Positions 3,728 to 55,520 of a DNA stretch of 64,000 nt are shown here, piece by piece (the first letter of the stretch is position 1; every line of letters starts with the position of its first letter). The notes beneath the pieces were generated by a model, which saw only the letters and a program-made list of their open reading frames with translations, made no database searches and was not told the origin of the DNA. Source of the stretch: Macrostomum lignano (lineage: Eukaryota); contig NIVC01000271.1 of NCBI GenBank assembly GCA_002269645.1, forward strand, positions 186,001 to 250,000, given 5' to 3'. Position numbers and translations under genes: made by a program.

Positions 3728-17471
<13,744 letters not shown>

Positions 17472-17559
17472 CTCTGAGATTCAATCAGACACTTGTAAAC
17501 TCTATCTGTGTGTATCGAAATTAGGAAAAATCTATTTAAATCATAATTGATGAGTGTCT

Positions 17560-18092
17560 CAATCTGAAGATGCTGAGACACTGCAGCTCTTCAGTCTGAA
17601 GATGCTGAGACACTGGAGCTGTTCAGTCTGAAGATGCTGAGACACTGGAGCTGTTCAGTCTGAAGATGCTGAGACACGAGCTCTTCAGTCTGAAGATGCT
17701 GAGACACTGCAGCTCTTCAGTCTGAAGATGCTGAGACACTGGAACTCTTCAGTCTGAAGATGCTGAGACACTGGAGCTGTTCAGTCTGAAGATGCTGAGA
17801 CACTGGAGCTCTTCAGTCTGAAGATGCTGAGACACTGGAGCTCTTCAGTCTGAAGATGCTGAGACACTGGAGCTCTTCAGTCTGAAGATGCTGAGACACT
17901 GGAGCTCTTCAGTCTGAAGATGTTGAGACACTGGAGCTCTTCAGTCTGAAGATGCTGAGACACTGGAGCTCTTCAGTCTGAAGATGCTGAGACACTGGAG
18001 CTCTTCAGTCTGAAGATGCTGATACACTGGAGCTCTTCAGTCTGAAGATGCTGAGACACTGGAGCTCTTCAGTCTGAAGATGCTGAGACACT
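17560..18092 (+). repeat. 32-bp minisatellite (tctgaagatgctgagacactggagctcttcag) downstream of the Vps8 stop
   Basis: About 16 near-identical copies; unit junction forms TCTTCAG-T-CTGAAGA. Confidence 0.97.
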
Positions 18093-18739
18093 TAAAGTCC
18101 TTCATCATATGAAAATTCTCAGCCAAAAATTGGATGAAAATGCTAACCTATTGCCATTTACTCGATAGATTATGTTAATTGTGTTTCGCTCTTATAGCAC
18201 CATCTTATGATGATATTAATTTTGTCATGTACATGGCGTATGTCACAGAAGTTCATGCCATAACCTTTTTTGTTTTACAAAATCACTTGATTAACTTATT
18301 GATACCTGATAGTGTTTACTGGGTTCGTCAAGTTTTATTATTTAACCACATAAAGTCCTTGCATAATTGATTGGATAAACTTCCTACTCAATTTTACGCT
18401 TACATTAGTCTGTATTCGCTGAAGGTTTCAATCTCATCTCATTATGTTAACTCGAGTTTAACCGAATTATTTACTATAGTTTTGAGTTCTGTGATTTGTA
18501 TTACTTTTTCATACGATTATGATTATTGTTGTTATTACTGTTAACATGTTACATCGATGATTTATCGTCAAATTATGTTTAAAAATTAAAAAAACATTTT
18601 TTAAAATAACCTTAACTGTTATGAATATTACTGTGTTCTAGAAAAGACTTTTTTAACCTTATATATTCGTTTTTTAAGTAACCTTAGCCTGGAACCGGAA
18701 TAAAATACTTGTCAGTTTGTGTTAGCTACTGTAGTTTAT

Positions 18740-18950
18740 TAGGTGAATTTCACAGGCCAGACAACAGATAGTCAGGGCCGCTGTACACCTTGTGTGAACG
18801 TGTGTATGAGTGCGTGCCTGTGTACAGTGTCTGCTTGTACTGCTCAGGACTCAGGAGTCAACGGAATGAGCAGAGTTGACGTCAGCACTGGTTGTGAAAC
18901 GACGTTGCCAAAGGCGTTTCTCCGGGATGCCCGCACAACCCTCTTGAAAA
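18740..18950 (+). mobile_element. SINE family B, copy 2 (5'-truncated or diverged)
   Basis: agtcagggccgctgtacaccttgtgtgaa..ggagtcaacggaatg..gtcagcactggttgtgaaacgacgttgccaaaggcgtt aligns with the minus-strand copy at 40140-40440. Confidence 0.65.
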
Positions 18951-19108
18951 CAAAGAAACTCTTACGTTACGTAACTCCAAAAATCTTCGGTCAGACACCC
19001 TGAAATCTCTGGATTAGTTGATGACACTCTAAGCCTTTTTAAGCCACGCTAAGCTCTCAATTGTAAAGGCATTCGAGCTAATCATTCTACGAAATTCTAC
19101 AATTTCAG

Positions 19109-19741
19109 TTGTTCCGTCGCTTCGGCCGTCTCCGAGCCGTCTACCGGCTGAGTCGTCGCAGAGCCAACCGTTTGCTGACGTGTCACCTCCTAGCCGCCAA
19201 CTGCGTTATCTGCGGCGTCAGCTCCTGCCTCGGCGACATCATCAGCCAGCGACTGGAATCGACCAATAATGATAGGCGAACTCACAGCTGGAGTCGCACG
19301 GCCACCATCAGCCTGTGCGGCCTGATGCTGGGCCCGCTGTCGCACTATTGGTACCTGTACTTGGACCGGCGTTTCGTTGGTAGAACGGGCCGCTCTCTGG
19401 CTTATAAGCTACTGTTTGACACGATCTTTTTCTCGCCATTGTACATCACGTTGTACGTTCTGGCGTTGGGCTTATTGCGCAAGTCTACGCTAGAAGAGGT
19501 ACGCGACGATCTAATTGAGTCCGGTCTCACGATTTACAAGTACGAGGCCACGGTTTGGACAGCCGCTCAGGTGTTTAACTTTTATTTTCTGCCAACCCGC
19601 CTGAGAGTTACGTTTGACAATTTGGTTTCGCTGGGATTCGATACCCTTTACTCGTATCGATTGAATCGATCGAGAGATGAGCGAAAGAGTGCAGAAGTCC
19701 AACAGAGCAGCTTAGTGATTGATCGAAGCGAAAATAAATAA
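19109..19741 (+). CDS. Mpv17/PMP22 family membrane protein (MPV17L2-like), single coding exon lacking its own ATG
   Basis: Motifs LGDIISQ, WSRT...CGLMLGPLSHYWYLYLD, KLLFDTIFFSP, WTAAQVFNFYFLP..RVTFDNLVSLGFDTLYS are typical of the family. ORF starts immediately after acceptor aatttcAG (19107-19108). Confidence 0.9.
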   Translation: MFRRFGRLRAVYRLSRRRANRLLTCHLLAANCVICGVSSCLGDIISQRLESTNNDRRTHSWSRTATISLCGLMLGPLSHYWYLYLDRRFVGRTGRSLAYKLLFDTIFFSPLYITLYVLALGLLRKSTLEEVRDDLIESGLTIYKYEATVWTAAQVFNFYFLPTRLRVTFDNLVSLGFDTLYSYRLNRSRDERKSAEVQQSSLVIDRSENK

Positions 19742-21132
19742 CTTTTAGATTCTGCTCCTTTGTCATCTTATTTGTGATTCATCGCCATCTGCATGTCTTT
19801 ATTTATTTTAAATTTTGTTTGCGCATTTTATTGGCCATTGCATTTTATTTGTTTAAAAAACTTTTATTTGATTTTAAATAAACAAAAATCTTTTGAATTT
19901 CAGTCTACTTTTGCTGTTTTGAATTGTTACTTGGGTCACTTTTTTACTCCTGTTGTTTTTTACTCTGAAATCAAGAATATTGACGTCGACGTGCATTTTA
20001 ATGATATTCACATGTACAGTGTACATGCATATACTATGTAAGTATTTTTTTACTGTAGTAAATCTAATTTTAACTTAAGTAGTGTTACAGTTAGAAATTA
20101 TATCATTCTCAATACTTATTGAATCGAATCGATTGTCTTATTAATTCTAGTCGAGGCCGTTTATACTTAGTAAAATAATTCTGGTTCAATTAATGCAGCT
20201 AGCTGTATTCGATCTCTGCTTTCACTGGTATTCTGCATTGTGATTAAAGATAAAAGGAGATTTCAGGTACAGATACATGCACATGTACATGTGGTACCAT
20301 GTAGCTAGCTACATGTATGACACGTACTTTAATTTCGACAGTTGAGAATTAGAAAAGAGCTCCCTTGCTCTTTTTCTTCTATCGATCTCCTTGTATACAT
20401 GTACATGAATATCCATATATAGTGTACATGTAGTAAAAAAACATCTATAGCGATAGCTGGCTTTTGCACTTTTTTAACAGAACCTGTTCACGAGCCAACT
20501 ACATGTATAAACTAAGGACTACTTGATATACGTTACTTTAGTCGTCCTTGGTATGAACGACGATTTTTGTCCGACTCAATGTGGTTAAAATTGAATTTCC
20601 GACATACAGAAGTTTTAATCAGGGACCACTGGTTTTATTAAAGTTTCCAGTTTGGAATAACTCTAAAGTTTTAATGAAAAACTCGAATTCTAGACGAATA
20701 CGGACGTCATAGTTTTATTTGCAGCTAGTATAGCTACATATGTTAGGTGTCTACGCTTTTCGGTGCCTGTGCTTTTCGGTGCCCGGCATTTCGGTACTCC
20801 AGTTTGATATCGGTGCCTAAAATGTAAATAAGAATTAGACACAACCACAAAAATAGAAAGTGAGCCATAATTGAACAATTTACGTTTCATTTGCAGTATT
20901 CTGTTTATTCGACTTGAGTTGACTTTGTATTAAAACAAAATAAATGACGCAAGCAGTAAAAACTTCACACAATATATTCGGAATTTGCAAAAACTTAAAA
21001 TTATTGTTGTGATTGTTTGCTGCTGCTGTTTTGTAAAACTAAATTTTAAGTATTTATTTCCAGTATTTTTATTATGCTTGTTTCTAATAAAAAGCTTAAT
21101 ATAGAATATTGGATCGGCGAGCAGTCAACTAA

Positions 21133-23153: not shown

Positions 23154-25708
23154 GCCATTGCCTACACTAGGTATATAGTATAGAAATTTTAGGTATAACA
23201 ATAACTAATATATATAGAAACATAGTTGACATGCAAAAAAGTCAAGTTTAGGCTTAATGTAGTATATATAATATATTTAAATATCAATCAAAAAAGTTCC
23301 TTTAGAAATGATTGGAAATATCAATAAAAAATAATAATTTAACTTGGAAAAAAGTACAGATAATAATTGCTTCTATCCAAAAAAGTAAAGGCAATACCAA
23401 AACTTTTTATCTAAAAATCAACCAAAAAATTAGATTTCCAAAATAGACACTTTAAAGTTCTGTAAAGCCCTTGTTATTTATAAAAAACTATATTATCATA
23501 AAAGTTGGCATATATAAAATTTTTTTAACTTATATAATTAAAACAACTCAAATTTTCATTCTAGTGTATTCCTACCATGATTTGGACTTTTGGGTATTGT
23601 ATATATAATTATATTTATTATGTCAATGATAATTCCAAAGATATGATAACCTATTATGTAAAATTTAGAATTTTGTAAGGAGTATATAATAAGCTTCTAG
23701 ATGCACAAACTAAAATAATTAGATTAGTGAGCAATTAATAGTCACATTTTCAAGATACTTTCCAAAAAAGTCTATGCACTATTACATCTTTTTAAACCAC
23801 TTGAACTGACTTTCAAACCATTGAAGCCACTAGACTACTTTAAACTTGGCATTTCCTCAACATGCCTAACAAAAGCCTCAATTGCAGCATTTTGCTTTTT
23901 GCTTTTGCTTCTAGCTTTTGTCTCAAAAATGGCCAATATCTGCTTTGCCACTATGCTTTTATTGTAGCTTCAATAGTAAAGTGCTTCCAACTAATGTCCA
24001 CTAGGCTAACTGTTATTTACACTTGGTCTCTAGGCCTAAACTATAGATCCAGGATTTGTTACTGATAATTTTTTAGATTAGGTTTAAGCAACCACCATTA
24101 AGTCTATTGAGCATAGCATGGCACAAAGCCATCTAAGCCTCCTTTTATCCTTTTTAAAATGATAAAGCACCTGGTATATAGAAATCTTGTTTAGGTTCAG
24201 CCTTAAGTGCAGGATAATGCAGATAGCTCCCAATAAGATCCCCATTTTTGTCTCTATTTAAGTAACAATTACCCTGGTATAATCCTCTAACATTGCCTGA
24301 ATAAAAGCAATTATCCTCTTTGCTTGCTATAGAAGTAGGGTCATGGCTGCACTATTTATCATCTAGACTCCATTGGCCACATCAAAATTTGCCCAACCAC
24401 TTCAAAACTATAGTCCTAGAAGGTCTTTCAAAGCCACTTGAAGTCACTCAAAGCTCTTTTGTTACCTTAGACCACTTTTGTAGCTATACTAAATCATTGC
24501 TTTGCAATGACCTCTGTTGAGCTCCATTGTGAATTTTCAATGTTAGGGGGATATGCTTTTTTGTGTGAATGGTAGTTGCAGAGGCATTATAGAGTGAATT
24601 TGTCTAAAATTGTATAAATATAATCACAAGTAATATATAAAACCTGCTATGCCAAATTGTGTATATCACTTTTCTACTTTACATATACAGAAACTTATTG
24701 CATACCCCTTATATAAATAAAAAAAATTACCCATCTTTCAAATAGTATATTTAAGTGAATGAATATCAATCTAATGCCCCTTTCAGGGTGCCCAATAAGC
24801 AAAGAGAAAAACTTATATTCATGCTAATCCATTGAAAAGCACATTTTCTTAAGAACTATTTCTTTCTTCAGTTTTATAAATTGCCTTATTTAAGTAAATT
24901 TTAATTGACAAAGATGCTTCCTATAAATCTCTTGCTTCTAAAAGTAACAAAAAGATACAACAAAATAAAGTCTTAACAAAGATAATAAGCATTCCCCCTA
25001 AATTGAAAGAATCCCCTAGACCACAAGTATCCTACCAAGTAATACCAAGTAAATAGTATTCTTAACTTTGGCATTGTAGCTCTAACCTAAAATGTCATTT
25101 TCTGTTTTAATTATATTAGCAGCTAAAGCAGTCTACTTTTTCTAAGTTGTTATCATACTTCTTTAATTCTATCACAATAGTCAAGGTAGGCTATAAATAC
25201 TAAAATACATTGTAGCCAAAATACCTTATATATGCTAGATGCATACAAAAAAGCCTGTCAACTTAAGCTCATAAAGTGAAGCCCAAGTAACCTATGTACA
25301 CAAATTATATGCCATTCTGCTCACATTGACACCAGGAAGCTGAATTTGGGGGAAAATGTACAAAAATTGGACCTGAAATAGTAGAGAACAAGCGAGGGCA
25401 CAATTAGGGACCATTAAGTAAACTTAAGCTTATAAGGTGGGATCCCAAATAGTTTTTTGTATTTTAGTTATTTTTTGTATACATTACTGCATGTTTAAAT
25501 CATTGGCCTCTCCCATTCCTGTGCCACATGTGATATTGCAGTTTACTCAAAAAAATTGCGCAGCCAAAACGCCAATTTAGTTGCTAGCGGCGCGCAATTC
25601 GATATTTAAAAAAAGTTTGTCAACGTTAGTTTAGTCAACAGTAATTTAGTGCCTTCCTTATTATTAAATATCTATTGTGCCACAGGTGGTGCTTAAATCT
25701 AATAAAAC

Positions 25709-31857
<6,149 letters not shown>

Positions 31858-41011: not shown

Positions 41012-55520
<14,509 letters not shown>

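What the first reader, a model, noticed from the sequence alone, without database searches (positions are those of the whole stretch)
19079..19741. Mpv17-family gene with no ATG of its own: ORF starts exactly at a 3' splice site
Seen: in-frame stop TAA at 19079-19081, no ATG before the acceptor aatttcAG|, and the ORF begins at the first exonic base (TTG TTC CGT...). The first internal ATG is ~70 codons in and would delete the first conserved helix (LGDIISQ). The N-terminus LFRRFGRLRAVYRLSRRR is Arg-rich, like a mitochondrial presequence. Established: the platyhelminth spliced leader ends in AUG and can initiate translation. Inference: translation depends on trans-splicing, making SL addition an obligatory on-switch for this gene.
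Basis: partly seen in the sequence, partly recalled or inferred. Interest (0 to 1): 0.7.

Follow-up and report, generated by a model that had tools for sequence, protein, structure and literature searches.

The report
Flatworm gene borrowing its start codon
A Macrostomum lignano gene for an Mpv17-like-2 mitochondrial membrane protein has no start codon of its own and most likely takes it from the AUG at the end of the trans-spliced leader, a mechanism already documented in flatworms, so this is a clean new example and not a new phenomenon.

Summary
The window is Macrostomum lignano Mlig_3_7 (NIVC01000271.1:186001-250000). An intronless 210-codon Mpv17/PMP22 ORF (19109-19741, +) starts at the first base after a TTTCAG acceptor. 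An in-frame TAA lies 10 codons upstream, and the first in-frame ATG is codon 73.

The M. lignano spliced leader ends in ATG. Joined at 19109 it reads ATG|TTG TTC... in frame, giving an N-terminus as long as that of Mpv17-like-2 orthologs.

- GenBank gene models at three copies of this gene and at a 51-55%-identical paralog are all ATG-less "partial" CDSs. They begin 0-27 nt after the acceptor and never upstream of it.
- The paralog has the same layout: a TTGCAG acceptor in phase 0, an upstream stop, and its first in-frame ATG at codon 123.
- The only plausible upstream cis-exons fail. One is broken by a stop in the sister copy. The other is an alternate frame of a VPS8 exon.

I could not reach SL-junction reads, so trans-splicing at this site is inferred. 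SL-AUG initiation has been known in flatworms since Cheng et al. 2006, and its conservation among orthologs is documented. The regulated "on-switch" reading has no support. Verdict: new member of a known kind, low-to-moderate interest.

The parts
19079..19081 (+). In-frame TAA stop 10 codons upstream of the ORF. It closes the reading frame in unspliced RNA.
   Evidence: Conserved in all three copies of the gene.
19103..19108 (+). 3' splice (trans-splice) acceptor TTTCAG. The AG is at 19107-19108, and the splice is in phase 0 with the ORF.
   Evidence: It fits the M. lignano trans-splice acceptor motif [T/C]TNCAG (PMC8629364). It is the only + strand match between 18073 and 19897 and is identical in all three copies.
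19109..19741 (+). Single-exon CDS of an Mpv17-like protein 2 homolog: 210 genomic codons (LFRRFGRL...SENK) plus TAA at 19739-19741. The predicted mature protein is Met (from the SL) plus 210 aa.
   Evidence: Pfam PF04117, E=1.7e-14. The GenBank CDS P0003 starts exactly at 19109 without Met. It aligns colinearly with orthologs with no internal gaps that would suggest introns. It shows 1.1% divergence and no indels against the L003 copy, versus 3.5-4.4% plus indels in the flanks.
19229..19249 (+). Codons 41-47 (LGDIISQ), the conserved motif of the first transmembrane segment. It lies upstream of the first internal ATG.
   Evidence: Invariant or near-invariant columns G42, D43 and Q47 (plus N31 and R63) in a 16-sequence alignment.
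19325..19327 (+). First in-frame genomic ATG (codon 73). Starting here would delete about one third of the protein, including the invariant N31, D43, Q47 and R63.
19877..19882 (+). Candidate poly(A) signal AATAAA, 136 nt after the stop codon (inferred, not tested).
   Evidence: Read from the sequence.
18766..19108 (+). Outron / proximal upstream region removed by trans-splicing. It carries four ATGs (18806, 18866, 18927, 19021), and each of their ORFs ends by 19032.
   Evidence: The region is 96.5% identical to the L003 copy, with indels. The 65-codon ORF from 18806 is broken by TAA in L003.
5983..17471 (+). Upstream same-strand gene, VPS8. Its exons are interspersed with minisatellite-filled introns, and it may be the first gene of a shared transcriptional unit.
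   Evidence: Pfam Beta-prop_VPS8 (E=1e-59) and TPR_Vps8. A RING-like exon ends at donor GAG|GTGAGC at 16323. The syntenic VPS8 gene call in L003 and the locus tag Mlig024096g2 ('g2') come. The 3' end at 17471 is inferred.

Best explanation
This is a functional, intronless Mpv17-like-2 (MPV17L2-type) gene of Macrostomum lignano that has lost its genomic start codon, or never had one.

Proposed mechanism:
1. The primary transcript is made either from its own promoter or as the second gene of a VPS8-containing transcriptional unit.
2. It is SL trans-spliced at the TTTCAG acceptor (19108|19109).
3. The 35-nt spliced leader ends in AUG. The mature mRNA therefore reads cap-...UUAUUGC-AUG|UUG UUC CGU..., and the SL AUG is the initiator.
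4. The product is a 211-aa protein, M-LFRRFGRLRAVYRLSRRRANRLL..., with a full-length, Arg-rich N-terminus ahead of the first transmembrane helix.
5. Unspliced RNA cannot make the protein. It has an in-frame TAA, no AUG, and upstream short ORFs.

Shown here: the sequence layout, the family assignment, purifying selection, ATG-less gene models, and conservation of the layout in a paralog.
Inferred: SL addition at exactly this site, initiation at the SL AUG, and mitochondrial targeting.
For: (1) Organism and SL. The window maps to M. lignano GCA_002269645.1 NIVC01000271.1. The species' single SL ends in ATG, and its acceptor motif is [T/C]TNCAG (PMC8629364).

(2) Geometry. The acceptor is in phase 0, TAA lies 10 codons upstream with no ATG between, and the first in-frame ATG is codon 73.

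(3) Gene models. These were built from RNA-seq with the SL trimmed, and transcripts were cut at SL-read peaks (TBONE; PMC5730564).
- The CDS in the window starts exactly at 19109 with Leu.
- The identical copy L001 starts at +9 nt.
- The roughly 95%-identical copy L003 (PAA83613.1, 'Mlig024096g2, partial') starts at +27 nt.
- Paralog L004 starts at +3 nt.
- None has Met, none extends upstream of the AG, and none carries an upstream exon.
- Neighbouring models for the MRCK kinase, an MFS transporter and a 57-aa gene start with ATG, so the lack of ATG is not a general artefact.

(4) Paralog. It is 51-55% identical, on NIVC01001503.1. Its acceptor is ctgtctgTTGCAG|ACC in phase 0, an in-frame TGA lies 19 codons upstream with no ATG between, and the first in-frame ATG is codon 123.

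(5) N-terminal length. Orthologs have 17-39 residues before the LLxTN motif. This ORF has 26, plus the SL Met. Invariant N31, D43, Q47 and R63 precede codon 73.

(6) Selection. The CDS differs at 7 of 633 positions (4 synonymous, 3 non-synonymous) with no indels. The flanks differ by 3.5-4.4% with indels.

(7) Precedent. SL-AUG initiation is established in flatworms (Cheng et al. 2006, as cited in PMC9851317, PMC12582326 and PMC5832876). Its use is conserved among orthologs in Neodermata (PMC3510090). Macrostomum annotators note that the SL's final ATG is a likely start codon (PMC10468722).
Against: - I could not obtain any read or cDNA that joins the SL to 19109. No transcript-derived protein 'MLFRRFG...' is in the 15-billion-protein collection.
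- The annotated 5' ends of the four models differ by 0-27 nt, and only one sits exactly on the acceptor.
- A very short upstream exon, for example one ending in ATG, cannot be excluded from sequence alone.
- The SL AUG context (UGC AUG U) is not a strong Kozak context by vertebrate standards.
- The N-terminal amphiphilicity is not above shuffles.
Confidence: 0.8

Rival explanations
1. A cis-spliced upstream exon, missing from the gene models, supplies an in-frame ATG and splices to the acceptor at 19108|19109.
For: The acceptor could in principle serve cis-splicing. Flatworms share acceptors between cis- and trans-splicing (PMC12582326). A scan of 6 kb upstream found three ATG...|GT candidates with a fair donor:
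- ATG18806 or ATG18866 to 18970|GTAACT, giving a 138-nt intron.
- ATG16225 to 16323|GTGAGC.
The indels in the 18806 ORF between copies are all multiples of 3.
Against: - In the L003 copy the 18806 ORF is cut by TAA before the donor, and the 18866 ATG is deleted.
- The 16323 donor belongs to the VPS8 RING-like exon, which is read in another frame.
- None of the four RNA-seq-based gene models carries an upstream exon.
- Ortholog N-termini leave no missing residues to be encoded.
- The paralog would need an equivalent exon, and none is apparent.
Confidence: 0.07
2. Translation does not use the SL AUG. It starts at a near-cognate codon (UUG at 19109, or CUG at codon 14) or at the internal AUG73, giving a truncated protein.
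For: Non-AUG initiation is widespread in ribosome-profiling data (discussed in PMC9851317). In-frame UUG and CUG codons exist at codons 1, 14, 22 and 23.
Against: - These codons have poor contexts (C at -3).
- In unspliced RNA four upstream AUGs would capture scanning ribosomes.
- A start at codon 73 deletes invariant residues and the first helix.
- The paralog's first in-frame AUG is at codon 123, which would remove over half of the protein.
- On a trans-spliced mRNA the SL AUG is the first AUG, 32 nt from the cap.
Confidence: 0.05
3. The ATG-less ORF is a pseudogene, or an assembly or annotation artefact.
For: GenBank flags the products as 'partial'. The genome is repeat-rich and polyploid, with many duplicated contigs.
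Against: - The ORF is intact in three copies and in a diverged paralog.
- CDS divergence is 3-4 times lower than in the flanks, with no indels.
- The sequence around the acceptor is identical in independently assembled contigs.
- The protein is full length against 3181 homologs.
- The 'partial' flag is the expected result of trimming the SL, ATG included, before ORF calling (PMC5730564; PMC10468722).
Confidence: 0.03

Closest known systems
SL-AUG-initiated mRNAs of Schistosoma mansoni and S. japonicum (Cheng, Cohen, Ndegwa & Davis 2006, J Biol Chem 281:733)
   Same: The flatworm SL ends in AUG. The SL AUG is in frame with the main ORF, and there is no genomic AUG that would give the conserved N-terminus. 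As summarised in PMC9851317, the SL AUG is in frame in 28% of trans-spliced S. mansoni transcripts and more than 40 cDNAs need it.
   Different: The present case is in a free-living macrostomorph, not a neodermatan parasite. It concerns an Mpv17-like-2 gene, and use of the SL AUG is inferred here, not assayed. I could not read the 2006 paper itself and rely on how later papers cite it.
Echinococcus granulosus SL-bearing cDNAs that use the SL AUG (Parkinson et al. 2012, PMC3510090)
   Same: The argument is the same as used here. The SL AUG is required if the N-terminus is to match conserved orthologs. Conservation of SL-AUG use among orthologs is reported (10 of 15).
   Different: Those cases rest on full-length cDNAs that carry the SL. 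Here there are only genomic sequence and gene models. No Mpv17-family entry occurs in the three supplementary files of that paper that are held as text.
slORFs: ORFs created by SL addition in nematodes, ascidians and kinetoplastids (slORFfinder, PMC9851317)
   Same: The start codon is donated by the trans-spliced leader.
   Different: Those mostly use near-cognate NUG codons inside the SL and are often novel or alternative ORFs. Here a canonical AUG at the very 3' end of the SL completes a conserved housekeeping ORF.
Human MPV17L2 (Dalla Rosa et al. 2014, PMC4117752)
   Same: Same Pfam family (PF04117). The best named relatives of the worm protein are almost all 'mpv17-like protein 2'. The size is similar and the N-terminus ahead of the first helix is basic.
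   Different: Orthologs in other animals carry their own ATG. The function in mitoribosome assembly and the inner-membrane location have not been tested in the worm.
Downstream genes of M. lignano SL-resolved operons (Ustyantsev & Berezikov 2021, PMC8629364)
   Same: There is a same-strand upstream gene (VPS8). The sister copy is named as the second gene of a transcriptional unit (Mlig024096g2). The acceptor motif fits.
   Different: The spacing is about 1.6 kb, or about 1.1 kb after removing the 534-bp tandem array. That sits at or just above the 1-kb repeat-adjusted operon threshold of that paper, so operon membership is uncertain.

Membership tests
Flatworm mRNAs initiated at the spliced-leader AUG | The organism's spliced leader ends in AUG immediately before the donor site. 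| tested here: met
   The M. lignano SL, CGGTCTCTTACTGCGAAGACTCAATTTATTGCATG, is followed by GTAAG in the SL RNA gene (PMC8629364). The organism was identified by an exact protein and contig match.
Flatworm mRNAs initiated at the spliced-leader AUG | The mRNA is SL trans-spliced at a defined acceptor. | tested here: inconclusive
   No SL-junction reads were reachable. Indirect evidence: the acceptor TTTCAG fits [T/C]TNCAG. Four RNA-seq-derived gene models begin 0-27 nt after the AG and none begins upstream. The name 'g2' implies that the transcriptional unit was cut at an SL peak.
Flatworm mRNAs initiated at the spliced-leader AUG | The SL AUG is in frame with the main ORF, with no intervening stop. 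| tested here: met
   ATG|TTG TTC CGT... is in phase 0 at 19109. The same holds at L004 9998 in the paralog.
Flatworm mRNAs initiated at the spliced-leader AUG | No genomic AUG can give the conserved full-length N-terminus. | tested here: met
   There is an in-frame TAA at 19079 and no ATG up to codon 73. Invariant N31, D43, Q47 and R63 lie before codon 73. Ortholog N-terminal lengths match.
Flatworm mRNAs initiated at the spliced-leader AUG | Translation is shown to start at the SL AUG. | not testable with these tools
   This needs ribosome profiling, N-terminal proteomics or a reporter assay.
Mpv17/PMP22 family (PF04117), Mpv17-like-2 subgroup | Pfam domain above the gathering score, and full-length colinearity with family members. 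| tested here: met
   54 bits against a cut-off of 27. 3181 homologs at E<=1e-3. The alignment has 14 invariant columns.
Mpv17/PMP22 family (PF04117), Mpv17-like-2 subgroup | The closest named relatives are Mpv17-like protein 2, rather than MPV17, PXMP2 or MPV17L. | tested here: met
   A profile search returns named hits that are almost all 'mpv17-like protein 2'. These are database names, not a phylogeny.
Mpv17/PMP22 family (PF04117), Mpv17-like-2 subgroup | Location in the mitochondrial inner membrane, with an N-terminal targeting signal. | tested here: inconclusive
   There are 9 Arg/Lys and no Asp/Glu in the first 24 residues, but the hydrophobic moment is not above shuffles. Location was not tested.
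M. lignano SL-resolved operon (downstream gene) | A same-strand upstream gene within 1 kb repeat-adjusted distance, with the downstream gene trans-spliced. | tested here: inconclusive
   VPS8 lies upstream on the + strand. The spacing is about 1.6 kb, or about 1.1 kb without the 32-bp tandem array at 17559-18092. The threshold is in PMC8629364.

The most novel reading that the evidence does not exclude
Dependence on the SL AUG may be more than a passive consequence of trans-splicing. It could be a conserved, exploitable control point.

- Both Mpv17-like-2 paralogs have diverged to about 51-55% identity, and both have been kept start-codon-less. This would push conserved SL-AUG use back from Neodermata towards the base of the rhabditophoran flatworms.
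- The fraction of pre-mRNA that is trans-spliced, as opposed to left unspliced or polycistronic, would then set how much of this mitochondrial protein is made.

The evidence here does not exclude regulation, and it gives no positive sign of it.
Probability: 0.08. Interest if true: 0.55.

Novelty: new member of a known kind. Interest (0 to 1): 0.25.

Why it matters
The mechanism is textbook for flatworm specialists, so the surprise is small. The case is still useful in three ways.

1. Annotation. These "partial" GenBank proteins of M. lignano are most likely complete once the SL Met is added. The annotation pipeline trimmed the SL together with its ATG. The same may hold for an unknown number of other "partial" CDSs in Mlig_3_7, which would affect ortholog calls and completeness statistics.

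2. Transgene design. M. lignano is a transgenic model, and its published reporter constructs add an artificial ATG. Anyone making a reporter or rescue construct for a gene like this one must either supply an ATG or keep the acceptor in phase.

3. Evolution. Two paralogs with the same ATG-less layout suggest the state is old and stable in a free-living, early-branching flatworm. This complements the conservation reported for parasitic Neodermata.

Tried and rejected
- **Rfam scan of the window and search for the SL sequence with up to 3 mismatches.** There is no SL RNA gene or other known RNA in the window, so the SL comes from elsewhere in the genome.
- **Exact look-up of the predicted SL-initiated protein 'MLFRRFG...'.** It is not in the protein collection. 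The cluster holds only the three genome-derived ATG-less forms, so no transcript-level proof was found.
- **Upstream cis-exon scan.** Three candidates were found and all were rejected. One is broken in the sister copy, one has its ATG deleted there, and one is an alternate frame of a VPS8 exon.
- **In-frame VPS8-Mpv17 fusion through the 16323 donor.** The donor is phase 1 in the VPS8 frame and the acceptor is phase 0, so a fusion would be out of frame (reasoned).
- **Supplementary tables.** I searched those of PMC5816591 for the gene id and for MPV17, and those of PMC3510090 for Mpv17/PMP22. Nothing was found. No supplementary files of PMC8629364 are held as text.
- **Cheng et al. 2006.** The paper could not be opened. 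I cite it only through papers that describe it.
- **Closest non-Macrostomum relatives (P0011, P0007).** I checked them for an SL at the 5' end. P0011, on a Logan contig, has its own ATG and no SL-like leader, and its organism is unknown. This was uninformative.
- **Hydrophobic-moment test of the N-terminus.** It was not significant, so the presequence claim rests on composition only.
- **Retrogene origin from an SL-bearing mRNA.** I considered this because both paralogs are intronless. The genomic sequence upstream of the ORF is an acceptor, not an SL remnant, so I rejected it.

Full report
**What is there.** I read 18000-21000 and listed ORFs.
- The + strand ORF 19109-19741 has 210 sense codons and a TAA stop.
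- Its first codon, TTG, follows the AG of caatTTTCAG directly.
- TAA at 19079-19081 is in the same frame, and the 27 nt between hold no ATG in any frame.
- After the acceptor, the first ATG in any frame is at 19269 (frame +1). The first in-frame ATG is at 19325, codon 73.
- The product matches Pfam Mpv17_PMP22 at E=1.7e-14, 54 bits against a cut-off of 27.
- The 'M' that the ORF and alignment tools print for the TTG comes from the bacterial code table and is not biology.

**Where it comes from.** The protein matches three entries of one 90% cluster exactly, all from Macrostomum lignano assembly GCA_002269645.1 (Mlig_3_7).
- The 210-aa entry P0003 lies on NIVC01000271.1 at 205109-205741. This places the window at 186001-250000 of that scaffold.
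- P0001 (207 aa) lies on the short scaffold NIVC01003479.1 (locus L001). Its sequence is identical over the aligned 630 nt.
- P0004 (201 aa; PAA83613.1, 'hypothetical protein BOX15_Mlig024096g2, partial') lies on NIVC01000413.1 (locus L003) and is a diverged copy.
- None of the three starts with Met. They start at LFRR…, RFGR… and AVYR…, which is 0, 9 and 27 nt after the acceptor.

**The spliced leader.** Ustyantsev & Berezikov 2021 (PMC8629364) give the single 35-nt M. lignano SL as CGGTCTCTTACTGCGAAGACTCAATTTATTGCATG, followed by GTAAG in the SL RNA gene.
- They report that 30% of genes in the deduplicated annotation are trans-spliced.
- They report [T/C]TNCAG as the top motif at trans-splice acceptors.
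- TTTCAG at 19103-19108 fits that motif. The motif occurs at 0.0023 per position in the window, and this is the only + strand match between 18073 and 19897.
- Joining the SL at 19109 gives …TTGC ATG|TTG TTC CGT…, in frame, with a 32-nt 5' UTR.
- The SL RNA gene itself is not in the window.

**How the gene models were made.** Wudarski et al. 2017 (PMC5730564) trimmed SL sequences from reads and transcripts and mapped the trimmed reads. Their TBONE pipeline cut transcriptional units at the SL-read peaks, and ORFs were then called with TransDecoder.
- A gene whose only start codon is the SL's ATG would come out of that pipeline as a 5'-partial CDS beginning at the acceptor. That is what the window's model shows.
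- Had the transcripts run upstream unspliced, the partial ORF would have started after the TAA at 19082. None does.
- The suffix 'g2' in the L003 locus tag marks the second gene of a transcriptional unit.
- Wiberg et al. [quoted passage not shown]
- Neighbouring models begin with ATG: the MRCK-type kinase (window 25709), and an MFS transporter and a 57-aa gene (both in L004). Missing ATGs are therefore not a general artefact.

**A paralog with the same layout.** An exhaustive HMMER search gave 3181 homologs at E<=1e-3. The best, P0005 (55% identical by phmmer, 51% in the alignment), is another M. lignano gene on NIVC01001503.1 (locus L004).
- Its annotated CDS also lacks Met (ASQWRR…).
- The sequence reads ctgtctgTTGCAG|ACC GCC AGT….
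- The acceptor again fits the motif and is in phase 0.
- An in-frame TGA lies 19 codons upstream with no ATG between.
- The first in-frame ATG is codon 123.

Two genes this far apart, both kept intact and both dependent on something upstream for an AUG, argue strongly against an accident, a pseudogene or an assembly error.

**Is a coding exon missing?** I aligned the two worm proteins with 14 homologs.
- Homologs have 17-39 residues before the conserved LLxTN motif. The window ORF has 26, or 27 with the SL Met.
- The invariant columns N31, D43, Q47 and R63, and the near-invariant L27, L28, G42 and G71, all precede codon 73.
- The exon from 19109 therefore already encodes a full-length N-terminus. 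A start at codon 73 would remove the first helix, including LGDIISQ at residues 41-47.

I also scanned 6 kb upstream for ATG…|GT exons that would join in frame. Three had a fair donor.
- ATG18806 or ATG18866 to 18970|GTAACT. The 18806 ORF is cut by TAA before the donor in the L003 copy, and the 18866 ATG is deleted there.
- ATG16225 to 16323|GTGAGC. This donor belongs to a Cys/His-rich (RING-like) exon of the upstream VPS8 gene, which is read in another frame.

A tiny exon ending in ATG cannot be excluded by sequence alone. No gene model has one.

**Functionality.** Between the window and L003 the CDS differs at 7 of 633 positions (4 synonymous, 3 non-synonymous) and has no indels. The 340 nt upstream and 600 nt downstream differ by 3.5-4.4% and carry 38 and 24 gap columns. 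The acceptor and the TAA are identical in all three copies. The gene is under purifying selection.

**What the protein is.** A profile search with names returned 439 hits at E<=1e-20. Of the 120 listed, almost all the named ones are 'mpv17-like protein 2', from arthropods and molluscs.
- Human MPV17L2 is an integral inner-mitochondrial-membrane protein needed for mitoribosome assembly (PMC4117752).
- The worm N-terminus (M)LFRRFGRLRAVYRLSRRRANRLL has 9 basic and no acidic residues. This is compatible with a mitochondrial targeting signal.
- Its helical hydrophobic moment is no higher than that of shuffled sequences. I treat targeting as plausible and untested.

**Surroundings.**
- Upstream on the same strand lies VPS8. 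Pfam finds its beta-propeller and TPR domains at 5983-6645, 7422-8147 and 10294 onwards, and L003 is syntenic. Its introns are packed with minisatellites.
- If its last coding segment ends at 17471 (inferred), the gap to 19109 is about 1.6 kb. Of this, 534 bp is a 32-bp tandem array (17559-18092).
- That puts the repeat-adjusted distance at about 1.1 kb, right at the published 1-kb operon threshold. Whether the gene is a downstream operon member or has its own promoter stays open. Either way SL addition is expected.
- The region 18766-19108, which trans-splicing would remove, contains four ATGs whose short ORFs all end by 19032. Unspliced RNA would therefore be a poor template even for near-cognate initiation.

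**Comparison with what is known.** That the flatworm SL's terminal AUG serves as initiator Met was established by Cheng et al. 2006 (J Biol Chem 281:733). I could not open that paper.
- PMC9851317 summarises it: the SL AUG is in frame in 28% of S. mansoni trans-spliced transcripts, and more than 40 cDNAs need it.
- PMC12582326 and PMC5832876 cite it in the same sense.
- Parkinson et al. 2012 (PMC3510090) found the same in Echinococcus. They showed that SL-AUG use is conserved among orthologs in Neodermata.

The present case meets every defining feature I could test: the SL ends in AUG, the join is in phase 0, and no genomic AUG can give the conserved N-terminus. It leaves two features open. 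SL addition at this very site has only indirect support, and initiation at the SL AUG is not testable here.

**Verdict.**
The mechanism is already known, the direct proof (SL-junction reads) was out of reach, and 'on-switch' in any regulatory sense is unsupported.
- I file it as a new member of a known kind. It has modest practical value for M. lignano annotation and transgene design, and a small evolutionary point: two diverged paralogs in a free-living, early-branching flatworm share the start-codon-less state.
- Confidence in the SL-AUG model is about 0.8.

Noticed in passing
window 1-64000, e.g. 4225-4904, 8545-10160, 13406-14722, 16372-16942, 47368-48311, 48770-49754: There is a very high density of minisatellite arrays with 15-36 bp units and tens of copies each (74 TRF rows at score >=100). 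Many lie inside VPS8 introns. One family (AGTTGCTGGGCCAGCCTCCCAGATCCTC) recurs at 26768, 41165 and 48770. These arrays produce many spurious long ORFs on both strands.
   Followed up: partly
window 17559-18092: A 32-bp tandem array (16.8 copies, 96% matches) lies between VPS8 and the Mpv17-like-2 gene. It is conserved in position in the L003 copy. Every unit carries an ATG followed by a 9-codon ORF, and also a CTTCAG acceptor-like motif.
   Followed up: partly
window 18806-19003: A 65-codon ORF lies in the presumed outron. The three indels that separate it from the L003 copy are 6, 18 and 3 nt, all multiples of three. Even so, the L003 version is cut short by a TAA. This is probably coincidence, but a short upstream ORF in one copy is not excluded.
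   Followed up: partly
L004 7925-7965 (M. lignano NIVC01001503.1): The Siva-domain gene model just upstream of the paralog also starts without ATG (IRMPKR…, with its own ATG two codons in). It is preceded by tttTTGCATGa, a 7-nt (9 of 10) match to the 3' end of the spliced leader, and has no AG acceptor. This may be chance or a side effect of SL trimming and mapping.
   Followed up: no
window 25680-25711: The downstream MRCK-type kinase gene (Pkinase, C1, PH_MRCK and CNH domains in the database call) has its own ATG at 25709. A CCACAG acceptor-like site lies 24 nt upstream of it and is conserved in all three copies. This is a normal gene that may be trans-spliced without needing the SL AUG.
   Followed up: partly
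window 4225-4904: A 15-bp repeat (TGGCGCCCCTGGTGC, 45 copies, 97% matches, about 70% GC) gives open frames of more than 230 codons on both strands. It would encode a Gly/Ala/Pro pentapeptide repeat if translated. Whether it is coding or satellite is undetermined.
   Followed up: no
window 55065-55520: An ORF here has a weak match to the pyruvate kinase C-terminal domain (PF02887, E=1.7e-6, just at the cut-off). It is probably one exon of a pyruvate kinase gene on the + strand.
   Followed up: no
L006 540-2042 (ENA metagenome contig ERZ17088134 NODE_503509): Two Mpv17/PMP22-family genes lie in tandem on one short contig of an unidentified eukaryote. One of them (P0007) is among the closest non-Macrostomum relatives, at 43% identity.
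   Followed up: no
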